NCBI GenBank assembly: GCA_965240325.2
Contig: OZ251254.1
Coordinates: 1-64,000, forward strand
Direction of reading: 5' to 3'
DNA length: 64,000 nt
Source of the DNA: Rebecca billardiae RCC1528
Lineage: Eukaryota; Protista; Haptophyta
Under the pieces are notes generated by a model that did not search any database, was not told the DNA's origin, and worked only from the letters and a program-made list of their open reading frames with translations. Both the position numbers and the translations under genes were made by a program. Positions 55,494-63,817 of this stretch are shown here, piece by piece. The first letter of the stretch is position 1. The number at the start of each line of letters is the position of its first letter.

Positions 55494-56286
55494 CGATGAC
55501 CAACTTACTCCTTAGCGGACAGCACGTCGCAGGTCGTCCTATACTGCTCGTCATCCACACTCCGGCGCCCAGCGCGGCGGCGCGAGGCGGCATGCCGCTC
55601 GCCCATCTCACCGGCGGAGTGCTGAGCCTCGGGCTCCCGGGCGCCGGCCAGGCCCGACGACCCACGCCGACACCGCACGCCCTCGCGCACCGCGCGCGCG
55701 GCTGGCGGCTGCCGGCGCCGCGCCCGGCGCCCGCCCGGCGCGCGCGTCATCCATAATATATATATATACTTATTATAATAATAATAATATAATAATAATA
55801 TATCCTCATCGCGTCATCGTCATCAGCATTGATTGCGGTTATTGGCGCTGCGGCGCGCGGCGCGCTTATCGCGCCCGCGCTGCTGGTTTAGAGAGTGCTG
55901 AGTGGTCCCGGGTCACACTCACTCACTCACAATGGGGCCGGCAATAAGGTTTAAGACGAGTTTATTTATATATATAGTTATATTATTTGGCGCGGTGGGG
56001 TTAGTTTTGGGGTGCCAATCGGGGCGGAGCACTGGGGTGGCCGCTCGAACTTGGGAGAGCATGCTGGCCGCTCCAGCGGCTCGCCATGTCCCACGAGCAG
56101 GCGACGCTGGGCCGTCAATCAAACGCGGCTGTCTCGGCCCGCGTCTACTCCGGGTGCTGGCGCGCATCGCAAGCAAGTGCTTCGACGCGTCGCTTCCGCC
56201 TTGGCATCAGGAGTGCTTGCGGGGGGATCCCCACGGGCCTGGGCAGCACGAGAAGGCGGCTCGCTTCGTGTGCGTCATCGTCTCTT

Positions 56287-56297
56287 ATATATATATA

Positions 56298-56371
<74 letters not shown>

Positions 56372-56440
56372 TTATATTAGCAGCGCAGCAGTAGTAGTAT
56401 ATATACATATATATCATATATATAATTATATAATAATAAC
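56287..56440. repeat. (TA)n / AT-rich microsatellite (similar tracts at 55753-55802, 24780-24825, 35920-35972)
   Basis: Directly visible. Confidence 0.9.
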
Positions 56441-56725
56441 GTATAAACTGTGATGATCCGGCCAGCCGTGAGCCGGCGCCGCCGAGCCCGAAATCCCGAA
56501 TCGGCGAATGCTGGCCCGCACGAGAATCGCGCCGCGCGTCCGCACGCGCCTGCCGGCAGTTAAATACGCAGCGCGTTTATTATTATATAATATAGATAGT
56601 GATGGGGTGATCGGGGGAGTCAGTGTTTTCAGGCGGGTCGTCGTCAGCACTGGCGGTACGGTACGTGCTGACCGTGAAAGATGAAACCGGCTGGCCCAGC
56701 AGGCGACCAATCAAGCAGCGCATCC

Positions 56726-59700
56726 TCAGATGACCGGCCGGGCGGCGCCGAGCGCGTCGCACACCGCGCGCACGACCAGCTCCGCGGGCGTCGCCTCGCC
56801 CTCCTCGTCGCCGCCGAGCGCGGGCGTGTGCAGCCGCGTGCACAGCACCACGATCGTGAGGTCGCACTCACGCACGTGCACGGCCGCGTGCCCGCTGAAC
56901 GGCCGGAGGCAGAGCGCGCCGAACGCGCCGTCGCGCCGGCGCGCGCCGCCAGCACCGCCGCCGGCGCCGCGAGTCGGACCGCACGCGCCATCCGCTGGGT
57001 GAGGGTTAGGGTTAGGGTTAGGGTTAGCGCTCGGCTCGAGCACGTCGAAGAGGCGCATCCCGCCGGCGAGCGCGAGCCGCTCCGCGCCCGCGCCGCCGAG
57101 CACCGCCTCGAGCGCGCGCGCCCAGTCCACCTCCACCGCGGGCTGCGCGAGCGCGTCGTCGAGCGTGCCGCGCGGCGCGAGCGCGCCGCGGCCGAGCGCG
57201 GCTAGAACGCCGCAGAGCGCGCGCGCGGACGCGTGCGCGTTGAGTCCGGGCGCGCACGCGGCGCGCAGCTGCTGCGCGTTCCACACGCGCGGGTCGGCGA
57301 GGTGCGGCCGCGGGAGGAACAGCCGAGCGGCGGCGCGCAGCAGCGCCCGGCGCGAGCGCCCGTCGTCGATCGCGTCGGCGAGCGCCGCGCGCATCTGACG
57401 CAGCGCCGCGCGCGCACCCGGGCCGAGAGGCGGCGCGGCGGCGGCGGCGGCAGCGGCGTGCGGCGGCGCGGCCGACGAGGCGGCGGCGGCGCCGCCGACA
57501 CCGCTCGCGCCGCGCGCGGCGGCGTCGCCGTCCGCGTCCGCGTCCGCGTCGGCGCCCGCGGCGGCGGCGGTGCGCGCGGCGGCGGCATGGTCAGCAAACA
57601 CCGCACCGCCGCCGCCGCCGCCGCCGTCGTCCGCGTCCGCGTCGGCGGCGCCGCGCTCGCCGCCGCCGCCGCCGCCGCCGAGCGCAGCGCCGCCGCCCGG
57701 CGCGGCGGCGATCTCGTGCGGGGAGAGCACAGTCTCCTCGTCCTCCTCGTCCTCCTCGTCGCTCTCCTCGTCGCCCTCGTCGCCCTCGCCGCCCTCGCCG
57801 CCCTCGCCATCCTCGCCGCCATGCTGCGCCGCCAAGTTCCGAACGGCGCCAGTGTCCATAAGTCCGGACACGGCCGCCAAGTCCGGGAGCTGCAGCTTGG
57901 CGAGTCCGGGGGCCCAGCGCCAGTCGGCGGGGAGCGCGGCGGCGCCGCCGGCCGTGCCGGCCGTGTCGGCATCGGGCGGCCCACCGCCGTCGTCCTCGTC
58001 GTCGTCCGCCGCGCCGCCGCCACCACCGCCGCCGCCGCAGCCGTAAGCGAGCTGTGCGCTATTGGCCGCGATCGCGTCGCCGGGCGCGCCGCCCGGTGAC
58101 AGCTCGGCAGCCGGCACGCCCGCCGCCGCGCACGCGTCCGCGGCGAGCTCGGAGAGCTCGCGGCCGGTCGCGCGGCGCAGCGTCTCGCCGAGGATCCAGC
58201 CCTGCGCCAGCCAGCTGTACGCGGCGGTGGGCTCGCGGGGAGATTGCAATCTCGCGCCGCCGCCGTCGGCGGCGGGCTGCTCCGGCGCCGCCGCCGCCGC
58301 GCCCGCGCCGGCGAGCGCGCACTCGGCGGCCTCCATGGCGCGCACGCACGCGGCCCAGTCGCTCAGCTCGGTGAAGCTGCCACGCGGCGTGCACGCGTGC
58401 TCGAGCCCCGCCAGCCGGTGGCGGAGCACGTCGCGGACGGTGATGGCGGCTTTCCGCGCCGCGCGGCGCGCGGCCGCGCGCGCGGCGGGCGAGGGCGGCG
58501 GCGCGGCGGCGCCGGCGCCGCCGCCACCGGCGCGAGCCGCCGCCCCGTCCCCCGCCGCCGCACCGGCCGCGAGCAGCTCGGGCTCGCGCGCGCCGCTCCC
58601 TGCGCTCCCCTCCGGACCCGCCTTCCCCGCACCGCCGCCTGCAACGCCGCCCGCAGAGTTCCCCGCCGAGTTACCCGCATTACCCGCATTACCCGCATTA
58701 CCCGCGAACTCGGGCCAGTAGGCGCACACGGGCGCGTCGAGCGACAATGCGCCCGCGCCGGCCGCGCGCAGCGCGAGCGCGCCGCTGAGCGCGCGCGAGA
58801 GGTCGAGGAGCGGGAAGAGCGTGGCGGGGACGACGGCCCGGGCGTCCACGTCGGAGAGGGTGCCGCCGCACAGCGACGCGAGCGGCGCGCCGCCCAGCCG
58901 CACCGCGACTTGCACGCCGCCCAGCTGCCCGCGCGCCAGCAGCGGCGCGAGCGCCGCGCGCACCGCCGCGGTCACGCGCTCGGCCGCGCCCGGCGGCGGC
59001 GGCGGCGCGGGGGCGGGCGGGAGCGGGTCCGGGTCGTCCTCGAGCGCCGTCGGCGCGCGCGCCTCCGCCGCGCCCGCGTCCTCCCCGCGCGCACCCGCGG
59101 CGCGCGCGGCGCGCGCGGCGCGCGTGAGCCACGGCGGACATGCCTCGCGCAGCGCGCGCGCCGCGTACGGAGCGACGACGTCGAGGTAGGGGAGGCGGAG
59201 GCCGAGCTGCGAGGCGAGGCCCTGCATGAGCTCGTTCGTGCGCACCCAGAAGAGCAGGTCCCCCGGGATCTCGTCGATCGGGCTCGACGAGCCGTACGCC
59301 GCCTTGTCCGCCTCGCGCTTCGCGACGTAGCCCTGGATGTGTTGTCGGTTACTTTCGCGCGCCTCGGCGGAGGGCGCCGTGTCGCGGAAGAGGTGCTGCA
59401 GGTTGTTGAGGTCCTCGGTCGGGTCGAACCGCCGAAAGTGCATGCCCACGTCCTCGAGCGCGCCGAGCACCTCGCCCGTGTCGCGCGTCGCGACGCCGTG
59501 CACCAGCCGCGCGATCGCGAGGCGCGAGCGCTCCGGCAGCGTCTTGCACAGCCCCCAGTCGAGCAGGACCGCACGATGGCTGCCGCCGCCGTCCGCACGA
59601 TGGCTGCCGCCCGCCTGCACGAGGATGTTGCCTGGGCCCAACGAGGCGGCGCGGGCGGGGGGGGGGCGGGGGCGCGGGCGCGGGGCGGGGCGCGCGAGAT

Positions 59701-62700
59701 CACGCGCGGACGAGGGCGCGGCGACCCTCGAGCGAGACGCGCGCGCTCGCGCCCCGGCCCTCGGGCCGCCGGCCGGCGGCGCGCTTCGGCGCTCGCCGGC
59801 GGCGGCAGCGACTGACGGCTTCATGGCAGCGCGCGGCTCACCTGGGTGCGGGTCTCCGGAGAAGTGGCCGTCGACGTGCACGCAGTAGGCGAACGCGGCG
59901 GAGATGGAGGTGACCAGCGCGGCGCGGTCCACGCGCGCCTCCGCCAGCTTCGCCTCGTCCGTCACCTGCGCGCACGTCACACACAAGAAAATAAACCCAA
60001 AAAATGAAGAAGAAAGAAAGAAAGAAAGAAAGAAATCACGCGCGGCGTGGGCGCGGCGGCGCGGCGCGCACCTTGAAGCCCGGCGCGTACTCCATGCACA
60101 GCACGCGCGCCGTGCTCAGCTCGGGCAGCACGGCCGGCACCGTCACCGCAAGTCCGGAGCCGGCGAGCGCGGCGCGCGCTCGCTCCTGATTGGCCGCCTC
60201 GGTCCGGAAGTCGAGCTCGTGCCTGGCGCCCGGACCGCCGGACCGGGAGCGGAGGGGAGGGTGGCGGCGCGTGAGGCGGCGCGCGACGGGCCTGCGGCCG
60301 ACGCGCGCGACCCCGCGCGCGACCCCGCCAGACGGGCGCGCAGCCATCAAACAGAAAGCAGCCTGCGCAGAATAAGAAAAGAAAAGAAAAGATCGCGCGC
60401 CTGCCGATGACCAAGAAGAAAGAATAAACGGCGGGCGGAGGAAAGGAAAAGAAAAAGGCGCGCACCTCACGGCGGCCACAAACTCGCGGATGATCGAGCG
60501 CAGGTCGTGCTCCGTCAGCATGGCGGTCGCCCACGTGATCAGCGTCACGGCGGTGAGGTCGGCGCGCAGCACGGGCGCGATGCCGCGGTGCTGCACCTTG
60601 AGCACCACCGACACGCTCTCGTACCCGCCCGCCGCCGCCGCCGCCTCGCCGCCGCCAGCCGCGCCGCCGCCGCCGCCCGTGCCGGCGGCGGCCGCGGCTG
60701 CGACAGGCCGAAGCACGGTCGCGCGATGCACCTGTGCGATGGAGGCGGTGGCCAGCGCCTCGGGGTGGACGCGCACGATGCGCGCGCCACCGGCCGCACC
60801 CCCGTACTCGCGCCCACCCACGCCCGCGCCCTCCGCGCCGCCCTCGCCCCGCCGCCCCCCCGCGGCGGCGCGCGCGCCCAATTCGTCCGCCAGCGCCGCG
60901 GCAACGTCAGCAAAGGGGGACGGTGGCACGCGGTCCTGCGAGACGCCGCCGGGCGCGCGGCGCGAGGCGTGGGGCGTGGCGCGCTCAGCGGCCGGCACGA
61001 CGCGGCGGCGCGCGCGCGGCGCGCGGCGGCGGCGAGCGCGCGCATGCGGCGGCGGCGGGCGGGCGCGCATGCGGCGCGCGCGGCGGCGGCGGGCGCGGCG
61101 GGCGGCGGGCGCGGCGGGCGGCGCGCGCGGCGGCGGCGCTTGCGGCGGGCGGCGCTTGCCTGCAGCTTGGAGAGCTCGCGGACGAAGGGCTCGGGCGTCA
61201 CGTCCGCGCGCGACGCGATGAACTGCCCCGTCTTGATCCAGATCCCGCGAAGCGACACGATCGACCGATGGATGAACGGCGCCGTAACGGCATAGGCGGC
61301 GTCCCATAGGAGATCCGACGGTTTCAAAAGTAACGTCTTAGTGAGGCGCGAAACGGCATAGAGGAGAAGGCCGACGTGCAGCGAGGTGACGAGCACGAAG
61401 AGCTGCGCGCGTGCACGCGGGCGGGGCGCCGGGCGCGCGTCAGCGCAGCCCGGCCGGCGCGCGCGCCGCGGCGGCCGCGCGCGCCGCCGCGCGCCGCCGC
61501 CGGCCGCGGCCGCGGCCGCGCGCGGGCCGGCGGCGCGCGCGCGCGCGGGCTTTTTGTGTTTTTGTGTTTTTTGTTTTTTGGGGTTTTTTGGGGCGGCGGC
61601 GCACCTGGCGGTGGAGCAGGCGGAGCGTCGCGGCGACGCCCACGCCGCCGATCGCGCTGCTCGCCTGCGCGGACCCGCGCGCCTCCGCCGTCGTCGCGCT
61701 GAGCGCGACCGCGCGCGCGCGGCGCAGCAGCAGCAGCGCGGCGCCGCCGTGCGCGGCGCGCGCGAGCGCGCGCGCGCTCGGCGCGGCCGCGGCGAGGGCG
61801 GGTGCGCAGGAGGCGGCGGGCGCGGCGAGGGCGGCCTCGAGCGCGAGGCGTGCGGGCCACACCGCTAGCGCCACGGCGCACAGCTCCAGCCCCCACACCC
61901 ACGCGTCGCGGCACGCTCCGAGCGCCGTCGCCGCGCCGCGCGCCGCCGCGGCGCCGTCCGCCGCCGCCGCCGCCGCCGCAGCCTCCAGCGCGTCCACGCG
62001 CGCGGCGAGCGCGCGCAGCGCGGCGGTGGACTCGGCGGCGGCGGCGCGCTGCGCGGCGCTCGCGCCGTGCGACGGCGTCGCCGAGACCGCCGACAGGTTC
62101 GTGTCGCGCCGCGCCGCGAGCGGCGGCGCCGCCGACGCCGCCGACGCCGCCGCGGACGCGGCCGCGCCGCCGCCGCCGCCGCCGCCCGCGGCGCGCGGCA
62201 GCGGCGCCGGCGGCGGCGCGGCGGGCGCAGGCAGCGCGCGCGCGGGCGGCGAGGCGCGCGCGAACGCCGCCGCCTGCTGCGCCTGCGCGCTGAGGCTCGC
62301 CGCGGCGATCGCCGCCGCGGGCTGCGCCACGCCCGCGAACGCCAAAATCAACCCCGCCGTCTGCGGATCGGGGTAAAATCTGAGTAGCAGCAGCGCGCGC
62401 AAATAGACCTCGAGCGCCGCGCGCCGCCGCTCAAGAGCTTGCAGCGCGGCGCGCGGGCGCGGCGGCGCGGCGGCGGCGGCGGCGGCGCGGCGCTCGTGCG
62501 GCTCGGCGGCGCCGCCCAGCGCCGCGCTCAGCCGCGAGAGCGGCAGCGCCGCCGCGGCCGCGCCGCTCGCGCGCGCCGCTGCCCCGAGCGCGACGGAGCG
62601 CGGCGGAAACGGCGGCAGAGGCGGCGGCGCGCCGCCGCCGCGCGCCGCGCCGCCGCCGCCGCCCGCGGCGGCGGCGAGCGCGGGCGCGACGAGGTCGTGG

Positions 62701-63057
62701 AGCTTGCGGAACTGGGAGTACCGCCGGCCGACGGACGAGGCGTGCGCCGCCTCGGCCGCGGCGGCCGCAGCCGCCGCAGCCGCCGCCGCAGCGTCGCCGC
62801 CGCCGCCGCCCGCGCCGCCGCCGCCTCGGCCGCCGCGCCGCCGCGGCGTCGCGGCCGCGTCGGAATGCACCGGTGTGGTTGTGAGGGCGATGGTGTACAC
62901 GGCGAAGGGCGGGCCGGGCGTGTGGATGCCGACGGTGACCGACGTCGTCACGCCCGCGCCCACCAGCGGGTTCGGCACGCCGTAACCGCCGCCGTAACCG
63001 CCGCCGTAACCGCCGCCGTAACCGCCGCCGTGGCCGGCGGCGCCGCCGCCGCCGGGA

Positions 63058-63094
<37 letters not shown>

Positions 63095-63581
63095 TCACCG
63101 GCGGCGACGCGGCGGTGGGCGGCACGGGGGGCGCGGGTGCGGCCGCGCCGTCTCCACCGCCGCGCAGCGCCGCGCCCGCCTCCGCGCCGAGCACGCCGCC
63201 GAGCGCGCGCTGCAGCTGAGGCGCAAGCGCCTGCAGCCGACGAACATCGCCGCGCGCGCGCAGCGCGCCGCGCACAAACGCGGCCTGCGGCTTGAGCTCG
63301 CCGGCGAGGATGCGCTGCGCGACGGCGATGTCCGCGCACGCCAGCGTCACGTCGGGCACCACCGCCGCCGCACCCGCGCCACCACCGCCGCCAGCCGCGT
63401 CGCCTCCGGCCGGCGGCGCGCGCGCCGCGCGCGCCGTGCTTCCGTCGAGAATTCCCAGCCAGCGCTGGCCGGCGATGTCGATGGCGACGGCGCAGGGCTG
63501 GTCGGTGGGGCAGGGCCGGCCGTCGATGGCGGCGGCGATCAGGTCGCACGCCGCCGCGACCGCGTCCGTCGCCGCGCTCAT
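56726..63581 (-). CDS. SCP2 + PX + ABC1/UbiB atypical kinase + beta-lactamase-fold fusion (~1956 aa); exons 63581-61605, 61402-61160, 60935-60466, 60222-60072, 59965-59842, 59631-56726
   Basis: SCP2: PDVTL..ILAGELKPQAAFVRGALRARGD. PX: VYTI..RRYSQFRKLH..LPPFPP..ERRRAALEVYL. ABC1: WIKTGQ, LQ/DRVPP, ATASIAQVH, LKVQH, ELDF..EA, DPHPGN, LDWG. Lactamase fold: GVQVAV, LDAPVCAYWPEF, ITVRDVLRH. All junction phases are compatible. Confidence 0.82.
56997..57027 (+). repeat. Interstitial telomeric repeat inside a coding exon
   Basis: GGGTGAGGGTTAGGGTTAGGGTTAGGGTTAG, read on the minus strand as (A)NPNPNPNPHP. Confidence 0.85.
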
Positions 63582-63817
63582 GCCGGCTGGGCGCGACGGG
63601 GGCCGCGCGGCGGGCGGCCGCGGGAAGCAGAGATGCGCGCGCGAGTGCGCTCCTGCGCACGCGCCGGCGTGGCCGCCGCCGGCTGGCAGAGCCTTCTCGG
63701 CGACTCGCGAGAGTGGAGGCCGGCACAATATCCCACGAGGAAAAGGCCGAAAAGCCCGCGACGAATAAAAAGCCCGAGCCGCAGCGAAAAGCGGAAAAGG
63801 GCGCGCGAACGCCCGCC

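What the first reader, a model, noticed from the sequence alone, without database searches (positions are those of the whole stretch)
56726..63581. One gene joins SCP2, PX, ABC1/UbiB kinase and beta-lactamase-fold domains
Seen: the SCP2-PX ORF has a phase-0 donor at 61604 (..LLHRQ|gt) that joins a phase-0 acceptor at 61403 (ag|LFVLVTSL..). That exon has no ATG of its own, and four more introns keep the frame, giving 5871 nt. Established: ABC1-beta-lactamase fusions occur in plants and some protists, and ABC1 kinases are normally mitochondrial or plastid lipid/quinone regulators. Inference: replacing a transit peptide with a lipid-carrier domain and a phosphoinositide-binding PX domain would retarget the kinase to endomembranes or contact sites. 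I do not know this architecture from the literature.
Basis: partly seen in the sequence, partly recalled or inferred. Interest (0 to 1): 0.75.

Follow-up and report, generated by a model that had tools for sequence, protein, structure and literature searches.

The report
Lipid-carrier, PX, UbiB kinase fusion gene
This is almost certainly one real six-exon algal gene that fuses a lipid-carrier domain and a membrane-lipid-reading PX domain to a UbiB-type kinase and a dead beta-lactamase fold. The same layout occurs across many protist lineages, yet I found no paper describing it.

Summary
On the minus strand, six exons (63581-56726, 5871 nt, 1956 codons plus stop) encode SCP2, PX, two hydrophobic helices, a complete ABC1/UbiB kinase-like domain and a beta-lactamase fold.

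**One gene, not two**
- Exon 2 carries the UbiB KxGQ motif and has no in-frame ATG.
- It aligns from its first residue to a relative with the same four domains in one uninterrupted reading frame (P0003).
- A paralogue in the same genome (contig 13) has SCP2, a PX-like stretch and ABC1 in one uninterrupted ORF.
- RNA evidence for the 61605|61402 junction is still missing.

**Not unique**
- The big protein search found a eukaryote-wide family: SCP2 - [FYVE, PX or PH] - ABC1 - beta-lactamase, with an added START domain in choanoflagellates.
- Members come from stramenopiles, Chromera, choanoflagellates, ichthyosporeans and a chytrid.
- Eight of nine full-text searches looked for this layout or for ABC1K with beta-lactamase; none found a paper describing it. 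The scan's notes hold no earlier record.

**In this gene**
- The kinase motifs are intact.
- The beta-lactamase SxxK motif is lost (DLSR).

**Best reading**
- This is a membrane-anchored, PI3P-directed UbiB ATPase with its own lipid carrier.
- The gene model is well supported; the function is inference.

The parts
61605..63581 (-). Exon 1 (659 codons) from ATG 63581: SCP2, low-complexity linker, PX, Ala-rich or coiled stretch, first hydrophobic helix
   Evidence: Sequence read. Pfam PX and SCP2. Third-position GC is highest in this frame up to the donor.
63207..63524 (-). SCP2 lipid-carrier domain (residues about 20-125)
   Evidence: Pfam 18.0 bits, below the cut-off. Family-specific SCP2 HMM 27.4 bits at residues 70-126. 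PDB sequence hits are dominated by SCP2 domains, the best at E 0.006; four weak rows at E 0.1 or more are not SCP2. Profile A2 hits SCP2 structures at 1.3e-5. Foldseek's significant matches are SCP2-fold structures, including the SCP2-like domain of alkylsulfatases and UbiJ-SCP2 6h6n.
62337..62969 (-). PX domain with two low-complexity inserts. Motifs: RRYSQF (62726-62709), LPPFPPRS (62618-62595), ERRRAALEVYL (62432-62400)
   Evidence: Pfam 22.5 bits against a cut-off of 21.6. The only PDB sequence hits are sorting nexins. Profile A1 hits Nischarin PX at 1.4e-10, plus KIF16B and SNX1/3/10/11. The AF2 model was too poor to test the fold.
61827..61883 (-). First hydrophobic helix (Kyte-Doolittle 1.68 over 19 residues)
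   Evidence: Of the 12 relatives in which a KxGQ motif could be located, 11 carry one or two such stretches in the 170 residues before it.
61403..61604 (-). Intron 1, 202 nt, CAG|GTGCGC ... GCGCGCAG|CTC, with an A-rich tract
   Evidence: The donor hexamer is identical to that of introns 3 and 4, and the acceptor octamer to that of intron 4. Only two AG acceptors exist in the stretch. It contains no ATG.
61160..61402 (-). Exon 2 (81 codons): second hydrophobic helix (61402-61346) and the UbiB N-terminal extension with KTGQ (61234-61223). No in-frame ATG.
   Evidence: BLASTP aligns E2 1-81 to P0003 499-579, 43% identity, E 1.4e-16. It hits 89 of 150 relatives. Coordinates.
60936..61159 (-). Intron 2, 224 nt, with a GC donor (CAG|GCAAGC)
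   Evidence: It is needed to shift frame from ..SKLQ to DRVPP... In P0016 the match to E2 ends at residue 163 and the match to E3 starts at 164.
60466..60935 (-). Exon 3: Ala-rich loop ASIAQVH (60746-60726) and catalytic Lys in VVLKVQ (60608-60591), with a Gly/Ala insert between them
   Evidence: Pfam ABC1 33.3 bits. Coordinates.
60223..60465 (-). Intron 3, 243 nt
   Evidence: The exon match resumes at P0003 683.
60072..60222 (-). Exon 4: ELDFRTEAAN and MEY motifs
   Evidence: Pfam ABC1 41.2 bits, profile 107-154. E4 2-50 aligns to P0003 683-731.
59966..60071 (-). Intron 4, 106 nt, T-rich
59842..59965 (-). Exon 5, ending in ..GDPHP plus the first base of the Gly codon
   Evidence: E5 1-41 aligns to P0003 732-771.
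59632..59841 (-). Intron 5, 210 nt, in frame and free of stops. Removing it restores the HPGN motif.
   Evidence: The contig-13 paralogue has an intron at the same codon.
56726..59631 (-). Exon 6: end of the kinase domain (NILV.., LLDWG at 59566-59552), the C-terminal extension of the kinase, then the beta-lactamase fold, then stop TGA 56728-56726
   Evidence: E6 1-166 aligns to P0003 773-937. Pfam results. Coordinates.
56729..58987 (-). Beta-lactamase (S12) fold with long Gly/Ala and acidic inserts. The SxxK site reads DLSR (58804-58793).
   Evidence: Pfam 56.6 bits. The alignment with 11 relatives shows Ser and Lys replaced here. Coordinates.

Best explanation
**What it is.** A single six-exon gene encodes a protein of about 1956 residues. 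In order it has:
- an SCP2 lipid-carrier domain;
- a PX domain;
- two hydrophobic helices, probably a membrane hairpin;
- a UbiB/ABC1 kinase-like ATPase domain with all its signature motifs;
- a beta-lactamase fold that has lost its catalytic Ser and Lys.

It belongs to a eukaryote-wide but unstudied family with the layout SCP2 - [FYVE, PX or PH] - ABC1 - beta-lactamase. I put this part, shown by sequence comparison, at about 0.9.

**How it probably works** (inferred, about 0.35-0.4).
- The hydrophobic pair anchors the protein in an endomembrane.
- The PX domain reads PI3P on the same membrane or an apposed one (endosome, vacuole or autophagic membrane).
- The UbiB domain uses ATP to loosen a very hydrophobic lipid, most plausibly an isoprenoid quinone or a similar prenyl lipid, from the bilayer, as is proposed for UbiB/COQ8.
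- The fused SCP2 domain receives or presents that lipid. This parallels bacteria, where UbiB is listed alongside the SCP2-domain proteins UbiJ and UbiT as supporting factors of ubiquinone synthesis.
- The dead beta-lactamase fold would serve as a binding or scaffolding module rather than a hydrolase.
For: **Gene model**
- Exon and intron arithmetic and splice sites agree.
- The ABC1 profile is colinear over E3-E6.
- Exons map without gaps onto P0003: E2 to 499-579, E4 to 683-731, E5 to 732-771, E6 to 773-937.
- E2 has the KxGQ motif and no ATG.

**Fusion**
- P0003 has SCP2-PX-ABC1-beta-lactamase in one 1354-residue ORF on a 4.2-kb contig.
- P0060 and P0044 are PX-ABC1-beta-lactamase as uninterrupted ORFs on metagenomic scaffolds.
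- P0123 has SCP2-PX-ABC1-beta-lactamase.
- The paralogue on contig 13 of the same genome has SCP2 (24.1 bits), a PX-like stretch (hhalign probability 92%, E 6e-7) and ABC1 in one uninterrupted ORF.

**Family**
- Of 34 relatives with more than 300 residues before the KxGQ motif, 23 have SCP2 and 23 have FYVE.
- PH versions are and START-bearing versions.
- Named members include Chattonella, Chromera, Corallochytrium, Chromosphaera, Didymoeca, Salpingoeca and Batrachochytrium.

**Domains and motifs**
- PX and SCP2 identity.
- Hydrophobic helices before the kinase domain, here and in 11 of the 12 relatives where the KxGQ motif could be located.
- Kinase motifs KTGQ, ASIAQVH, VVLKVQ, ELDF..EAAN, DPHPGN and LLDWG are all present.
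- The N-terminus starts directly with SCP2, with no room for a presequence.

**Function, from the literature**
- UbiB proteins are ATPases proposed to extract ubiquinone precursors from membranes. UbiJ and UbiT are SCP2-domain partners (bioRxiv 10.64898/2026.03.05.709815).
- UbiB proteins control the cellular distribution of coenzyme Q in yeast (PMC8346625).
Against: - There is no transcript or protein evidence from this organism, so the exact E1/E2 junction rests on consensus and homology.
- The C-terminal 240 residues of E1 show no significant similarity to relatives.
- SCP2 is below Pfam's own cut-off and PX is only just above it. The PX fold model failed.
- PX has Arg where most PI3P-binding PX domains have Lys in the PxxPxK loop. 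Lipid specificity is not shown.
- Nothing tested here identifies the lipid, the membrane or any ATPase activity.
- Long low-complexity inserts and the lost SxxK motif could be signs of relaxed constraint.
Confidence: 0.75

Rival explanations
1. Two neighbouring genes. An SCP2-PX protein would end at TGA 61442-61440, and a separate ABC1-beta-lactamase gene would have its first exon or start site missed here.
For: If E1 is read through, it ends in a stop 163 nt past the proposed donor. The 202-nt gap has an A-rich tract that could in principle be intergenic. There is no RNA evidence.
Against: E2 has no ATG in frame, and none lies in its open frame upstream. The first in-frame Met of the kinase part lies after the catalytic Lys. 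Homology to P0003 starts at residue 1 of E2. Relatives and the same-genome paralogue have these domains in one ORF in the same order. The splice signals are identical to other introns of the gene.
Confidence: 0.05
2. It is one gene but works like canonical ABC1K/COQ8 proteins inside mitochondria or plastids. SCP2 and PX would then be accessory lipid-binding parts, not address labels.
For: All characterised UbiB proteins act in mitochondria, plastids or bacterial membranes (PMC8346625; PMC1560137, predicts the plant ABC1-S12 protein to be mitochondrial).
Against: The N-terminus begins directly with the SCP2 fold, as in relatives, leaving no room for a presequence or a signal peptide. The slot after SCP2 is filled by FYVE, PX or PH in different lineages, and these modules read cytosol-facing phosphoinositides (established knowledge).
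Confidence: 0.1
3. It is one gene but acts as a true protein kinase that signals at PI3P membranes, with lipid domains that only position it.
For: All kinase-like catalytic residues are present. Plant ABC1K proteins have been reported to be linked to phosphorylation of plastoglobule proteins (own knowledge; PMC4915526 was listed but not read).
Against: The KxGQ extension, present here, occludes the substrate cleft in COQ8A, and UbiB proteins show ATPase rather than protein kinase activity in vitro (background stated, and own knowledge). The family carries one, and in some lineages two, lipid-transfer domains (SCP2, START).
Confidence: 0.12
4. A decaying gene. The frame would be open only because stops are rare in 80% GC DNA, and the protein would no longer be functional.
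For: Many overlapping long ORFs on both strands show that an open frame means little here. The N-terminal domain scores are weak, the inserts are very long, and SxxK is lost.
Against: Five introns keep phase and restore conserved motifs exactly. All UbiB motifs are intact. Third-position GC is strongly periodic in the coding frame. Three of four other PX-type relatives have also lost SxxK, so that loss is a lineage trait and not decay of this copy.
Confidence: 0.05

Closest known systems
Uncharacterised database proteins of type SCP2-PX-ABC1-beta-lactamase (P0003, P0123; P0060 and P0044 with weak SCP2)
   Same: Same four domains in the same order, hydrophobic stretch before KxGQ in three of the four (none found in P0060), and exon-by-exon colinear similarity at 35-47% identity in the kinase part. 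Three of the four also lack SxxK.
   Different: The window protein is 400-600 residues longer than three of them because of Gly/Ala/acidic inserts; P0123, at 2056 residues, is longer than it. Its gene is split by five introns, whereas P0003, P0044 and P0060 are uninterrupted ORFs. Their organisms are unknown (metagenome or metatranscriptome contigs).
SCP2-FYVE-ABC1-beta-lactamase proteins, for example Chromera velia A0A0G4HLH0 ('FYVE-type domain-containing protein'), a Chattonella subsalsa MMETSP transcript, and choanoflagellate forms with an added START domain
   Same: Same family and layout, with a phosphoinositide-binding module in the same slot and the kinase motifs.
   Different: FYVE instead of PX. 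SxxK is kept in all FYVE-type members examined. Choanoflagellates add START.
Plant ABC1-S12 proteins (At5g24810, LOC_Os06g48770; PMC1560137) and the streptophyte alga Chlorokybus (P0022)
   Same: ABC1 followed by a beta-lactamase (S12) domain on one chain. They were recovered by the same search.
   Different: Short N-terminus of about 150-170 residues without SCP2 or a phosphoinositide reader. Predicted to be mitochondrial (PMC1560137).
Bacterial UbiB with the SCP2-domain proteins UbiJ and UbiT; yeast and human COQ8, Cqd1, Cqd2
   Same: UbiB fold motifs. SCP2 and UbiB also occur together as supporting factors of bacterial ubiquinone synthesis. The SCP2 model matches the UbiJ-SCP2 structure 6h6n.
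   Different: In bacteria they are separate polypeptides in a ubiquinone-synthesis pathway. Here they are fused, carry a PX domain and have no organelle presequence.
PX-domain kinases and sorting nexins (SGK3/CISK, Nischarin, KIF16B)
   Same: A PX domain used as an N-terminal membrane address on a larger enzyme.
   Different: The catalytic part here is an atypical UbiB domain, not a eukaryotic protein kinase or a motor.

Membership tests
UbiB/ABC1/ADCK atypical kinase family (PF03109) | Match to the ABC1 profile over its whole length | tested here: met
   Colinear exon hits at profile 35-51 (33.3 bits), 107-154 (41.2), 156-195 (13.4) and 198-241 (12.0). The ORF-level hit is 72.2 bits.
UbiB/ABC1/ADCK atypical kinase family (PF03109) | N-terminal extension with a KxGQ motif | tested here: met
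   KTGQ at 61234-61223 in exon 2. Exon 2 matches 89 of 150 relatives.
UbiB/ABC1/ADCK atypical kinase family (PF03109) | Ala-rich loop, catalytic Lys, ExxxEAxN, DPHPGN, and a D-x-G metal-binding motif | tested here: met
   ASIAQVH, VVLKVQ, ELDFRTEAAN, GDPHP|GN and LLDWG, read from the exons.
UbiB/ABC1/ADCK atypical kinase family (PF03109) | Lipid-stimulated ATPase activity | not testable with these tools
   Needs purified protein.
SCP2-[FYVE/PX/PH]-ABC1-beta-lactamase family (unnamed; defined here from database proteins) | SCP2 at the extreme N-terminus | tested here: met
   Family HMM 27.4 bits at residues 70-126. Profile A2 hits SCP2 structures. Foldseek.
SCP2-[FYVE/PX/PH]-ABC1-beta-lactamase family (unnamed; defined here from database proteins) | A phosphoinositide-binding module between SCP2 and the kinase | tested here: met
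   PX: Pfam 22.5 bits; profile A1 hits PX structures at 1.4e-10.
SCP2-[FYVE/PX/PH]-ABC1-beta-lactamase family (unnamed; defined here from database proteins) | Hydrophobic helices shortly before KxGQ | tested here: met
   E1 567-585 and E2 1-19. E2 1-19 aligns with the P0003 helix at 499-517.
SCP2-[FYVE/PX/PH]-ABC1-beta-lactamase family (unnamed; defined here from database proteins) | All domains on one polypeptide | tested here: inconclusive
   Inferred from splice sites, the lack of an ATG in exon 2, relatives, and the intron-free paralogue. There is no RNA or protein data.
PX domain (PF00787), PI3P-binding class | Pfam score over the gathering cut-off | tested here: met
   22.5 against 21.6 bits.
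PX domain (PF00787), PI3P-binding class | PI3P-contact residues: R-[YF] in the RRYSxF motif, basic residue after PxxP, Arg in helix 2 | tested here: inconclusive
   RRYSQF and ERRRAALEVYL are present. The loop reads PPFPPR, with Arg in place of the usual Lys. Binding was not measured.
PX domain (PF00787), PI3P-binding class | PX fold | tested here: inconclusive
   AF2 pLDDT 60 and no structural match. The inserts are modelled as long helices.
SCP2 sterol-carrier family (PF02036) | Pfam score over the gathering cut-off | tested here: not met
   18.0 against 21.3 bits. Membership rests on the family HMM, the PDB profile and the fold match.
Active serine beta-lactamase / S12 peptidase (PF00144) | Match to the fold profile | tested here: met
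   56.6 bits.
Active serine beta-lactamase / S12 peptidase (PF00144) | SxxK motif with nucleophile Ser and general-base Lys | tested here: not met
   DLSR at 58804-58793, where relatives have SVSK, SVTK or SCTK. It is a beta-lactamase fold, not an active member.
Plant-type ABC1-S12 protein (At5g24810 type) | Short N-terminus with an organelle presequence directly before the kinase | tested here: not met
   659 residues of SCP2-PX precede the kinase. The plant-type relatives P0022, P0016 and P0017 start ABC1 at residue 146-174.

The most novel reading that the evidence does not exclude
The family to which this gene belongs would be an unrecognised extramitochondrial arm of UbiB biology. It would be a membrane-anchored, ATP-driven extractor of isoprenoid quinones or similar lipids that hands cargo to its own fused carrier domains (SCP2, and START in some lineages). 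Interchangeable FYVE, PX or PH modules would address it to PI3P-marked endosomal, vacuolar or autophagic membranes or contact sites. That would give a direct handle on how coenzyme Q and related lipids reach non-mitochondrial membranes.
Probability: 0.2. Interest if true: 0.8.

Novelty: new variant of a known kind. Interest (0 to 1): 0.55.

Why it matters
UbiB/ABC1 proteins are ancient and linked to disease, but their mechanism is still unclear. All studied members sit in mitochondria, plastids or bacterial membranes.

A conserved eukaryotic branch fuses the UbiB domain to a lipid carrier and to a swappable phosphoinositide reader. This works as 'Rosetta stone' evidence on two points:
- UbiB ATPases work hand in hand with lipid-transfer domains, as bacterial UbiB is listed alongside the SCP2-domain proteins UbiJ and UbiT.
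- Some UbiB proteins probably act on endomembranes.

The repeated exchange of FYVE, PX and PH at one position argues that membrane addressing is under selection.

For annotating this genome, the result joins what an ab initio caller would probably split into two genes.

Tried and rejected
**Searches and models that gave nothing**
- Word-index protein search with the 1086-residue ORF, whole and restricted to residues 119-330, returned nothing. The likely causes are low-complexity words and relatives at 45% identity or less.
- The ESM Atlas gave no usable hit with exon 1.
- phmmer of exon 1 against the 150 relatives found one weak SCP2 hit (P0130). BLASTP of exon 1 against P0003 or the paralogue found only the SCP2 part, at E 0.004 and 0.019. 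The PX stretches are too divergent for pairwise detection, so I used profiles instead.
- AF2 of the PX stretch on a 4-row alignment gave pLDDT 60 and no fold match, so it is inconclusive.
- The own-genome search with exon 1 failed twice on the server side.

**Questions left unresolved**
- A tree on 183 columns of the exon-6 kinase part left the number of PX origins open, anywhere from 1 to 5. I make no claim about which slot-2 module is ancestral.
- Enumerating alternative in-frame donor and acceptor pairs for intron 1 gave 52 formal combinations. Only four use GT donors, and only 61604/61403 matches the gene's other introns.

**Ideas rejected**
- I looked for a beta-lactamase exon downstream of the contig-13 paralogue and found none.
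- Another ABC1-beta-lactamase gene in this genome: no other PF00144 hit lies near an ABC1 hit.

- I never built, searched or folded the joined spliced protein. Every search was done exon by exon, by reference.


Full report
**Setting**

The window is the first 64 kb of contig 38 of a 72-Mb, 41-contig eukaryotic assembly. GC content is about 80% in this region. In DNA this GC-rich, long open frames occur on both strands by chance. An open frame alone therefore counts for little, and I relied on homology and motifs.

**The observation**

The six exons are:
- E1 63581-61605
- E2 61402-61160
- E3 60935-60466
- E4 60222-60072
- E5 59965-59842
- E6 59631-56726

They sum to 5871 nt.

Intron 1 (61604-61403, 202 nt) has the donor CAG|GTGCGC and the acceptor GCGCGCAG|CTC. 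Both are phase 0. Introns 3 and 4 use the same donor hexamer, and intron 4 has the same acceptor octamer. Intron 2 has a GC donor (CAG|GCAAGC).

If E1 is read through, it stops at 61442-61440. The frame of exon 2 holds no ATG, either within the exon or upstream.

Among in-frame alternatives for intron 1, only four use GT donors. Only two AG acceptors exist in the stretch. Third-position GC stays at 0.82-1.00 in the E1 frame up to the donor, so the poorly conserved C-terminal part of E1 also looks coded in that frame.

**Domains**

Pfam, exon by exon, gives:
- PX 22.5 bits (cut-off 21.6).
- SCP2 18.0 bits (cut-off 21.3).
- ABC1 pieces that follow one another along the profile: 35-51, 107-154, 156-195 and 198-241.
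- Beta-lactamase 56.6 bits.

Exon 2 lies before the start of the Pfam ABC1 model. It carries the KxGQ motif of the UbiB N-terminal extension (KTGQ, 61234-61223).

I checked the weak N-terminal calls independently.
- *PX.* A profile of the PX stretches of the window and three relatives hits the Nischarin PX domain at 1.4e-10, followed by KIF16B and many sorting-nexin PX domains. The motifs RRYSQF, a PxxPxR loop and ERRRAALEVYL are present.
- *SCP2.*
  - A family-specific HMM scores E1 at 27.4 bits.
  - A five-row profile hits only SCP2 structures.
  - A low-confidence AF2 model (pLDDT 55) has SCP2-fold structures, UbiJ-SCP2 among them, as its significant Foldseek matches.
- The AF2 model of the PX stretch was too poor to use.

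**Is it one gene?**

Three lines of evidence say yes.

*First, exon 2.* It cannot start a protein, yet it is an integral part of the kinase fold. The first in-frame Met of the kinase part comes after the catalytic Lys.

*Second, relatives.* The word-index search failed. I then searched all 1.84 billion representative proteins with the first 320 residues of exon 6, which gave 586 hits. Many hits carry 350-900 residues before their kinase domain. Pfam scans show what those residues are:
- SCP2 sits at the very N-terminus.
- Next comes FYVE in most proteins.
- PX takes that place in P0003, P0044, P0060 and P0123.
- PH takes it in P0065, P0077 and P0135.
- ABC1 and beta-lactamase follow, with a START domain appended in two choanoflagellates.

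A local census of the 150 best hits found 34 with more than 300 residues before the KxGQ motif. Of those, 23 have SCP2 and 23 have FYVE.

P0003 is one uninterrupted 1354-residue ORF on a 4.2-kb contig. P0060 and P0044 are uninterrupted ORFs on metagenomic scaffolds, flanked by other eukaryote-like genes.

The window's exons map onto P0003 without gaps:
- E2 1-81 to 499-579
- E4 2-50 to 683-731
- E5 1-41 to 732-771
- E6 1-166 to 773-937

So similarity begins at the first codon after the proposed acceptor.

*Third, a paralogue in the same genome.* On contig 13 one continuous ORF holds:
- SCP2 (Pfam 24.1 bits);
- a PX-like stretch (hhalign against the PX profile: probability 92%, E 6e-7);
- a hydrophobic stretch and the KxGQ motif;
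- ABC1 positions 2-195.

There is no intron between PX and the kinase. The ORF is followed by an intron at exactly the HPGN codon that intron 5 splits in the window gene. That paralogue has no beta-lactamase part. The window gene is the only ABC1-beta-lactamase gene in the assembly.

I put the single-gene reading at about 0.9. The exact junction remains unverified because no RNA data were available.

**State of the catalytic parts**

All UbiB signatures are present:
- KTGQ
- the Ala-rich loop ASIAQVH
- VVLKVQ
- ELDFRTEAAN
- DPHPGN, restored by splicing out intron 5
- LLDWG

The beta-lactamase fold reads DLSR where relatives have SxxK (58804-58793). The same loss is seen in three of the four other PX-type proteins. 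It is not seen in P0060 or in the FYVE-type proteins examined. The fold is therefore best treated as a pseudoenzyme in this lineage.

Two hydrophobic 19-residue stretches lie just before the kinase:
- the end of E1, 61883-61827
- the start of E2, 61402-61346

The second aligns with a hydrophobic helix of P0003. Of the 12 relatives in which a KxGQ motif could be located, 11 have one or two such stretches in the same place.

**How it probably works (inference)**

The N-terminus starts directly with SCP2, as in relatives. I see no presequence or signal peptide, unlike canonical mitochondrial or plastid ABC1 proteins.

The slot after SCP2 is filled by three unrelated phosphoinositide-binding folds in different lineages. 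This argues that binding to a phosphoinositide-marked, cytosol-facing membrane is the selected function of that slot.

What the literature says about UbiB proteins:
- They are ATPases stimulated by quinone-like phenols.
- They are proposed to extract hydrophobic ubiquinone precursors from membranes.
- In bacteria the SCP2-domain proteins UbiJ and UbiT are supporting factors in the same ubiquinone pathway (bioRxiv 10.64898/2026.03.05.709815).
- In yeast, UbiB proteins control how coenzyme Q is distributed in the cell (PMC8346625).

The fusion of SCP2 (and START in some lineages) to a UbiB domain therefore suggests an extract-and-hand-over machine for a very hydrophobic lipid. The hydrophobic pair would anchor it, and PX would address it to PI3P membranes or to a contact site. 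I give this mechanism 0.35-0.4. The lipid, the membrane and the activity are all untested.

**Comparison with what is known**

The ABC1-S12 (beta-lactamase) architecture is published for Arabidopsis At5g24810 and rice, where it is predicted to be mitochondrial (PMC1560137). The streptophyte alga Chlorokybus has it too.

The long form, with SCP2 and a phosphoinositide reader, sits in databases under names such as 'FYVE-type domain-containing protein' (Chromera velia A0A0G4HLH0), 'aarF domain-containing kinase' or 'hypothetical protein'.

Of nine full-text searches, eight looked for this layout or for ABC1K with beta-lactamase, and none found a paper describing it. The ninth was for UbiB function. 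The library does not cover most subscription journals. The scan's own notes hold nothing on it.

The gene is thus a member of an existing but undescribed family. Relative to the described ABC1-beta-lactamase kind, it is a new variant.

**Limits**

All comparisons were made exon by exon, by reference.
- The tree on the exon-6 part (183 columns) places the window weakly with Phaeothamnion (P0001), Chattonella (P0002, FYVE) and P0003 (PX). It cannot say how often PX replaced FYVE, or which form is ancestral.

Noticed in passing
G000:C13 about 513.4-517.0 kb, minus strand (L004:5400-9043): A paralogue has SCP2, a PX-like stretch and ABC1 in one uninterrupted ORF. It has an intron at the same HPGN codon as intron 5 of the window gene, and no beta-lactamase part.
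   Followed up: partly
Relatives P0065 (Batrachochytrium salamandrivorans KAH9249840.1), P0077, P0135; P0009, P0011: The slot between SCP2 and the kinase holds PH instead of FYVE or PX in a chytrid and two environmental proteins. Two choanoflagellates add a START domain after the beta-lactamase.
   Followed up: partly
window 58793-58804 and relatives P0003, P0044, P0123: The beta-lactamase SxxK motif is lost in four of the five PX-type proteins. It is kept in all FYVE-type proteins examined. This could be a lineage effect or a functional link.
   Followed up: partly
window 61158-61159: Intron 2 uses a GC-AG donor (CAG|GCAAGC).
   Followed up: no
window about 62980-63029: A Gly-Tyr repeat, (GGGY)x4, lies in the linker between SCP2 and PX. 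The beta-lactamase fold also holds long Gly/Ala runs and an acidic Glu/Asp run.
   Followed up: no
window 56200-56450: A TA-rich microsatellite lies just 3' of the stop codon. GC falls to 0.49 against about 0.8 in the flanks.
   Followed up: no
window 63720-63800: A T-rich, lower-GC stretch lies upstream of ATG 63581. It is a likely promoter or 5' UTR, with an out-of-frame ATG at about 63819.
   Followed up: no
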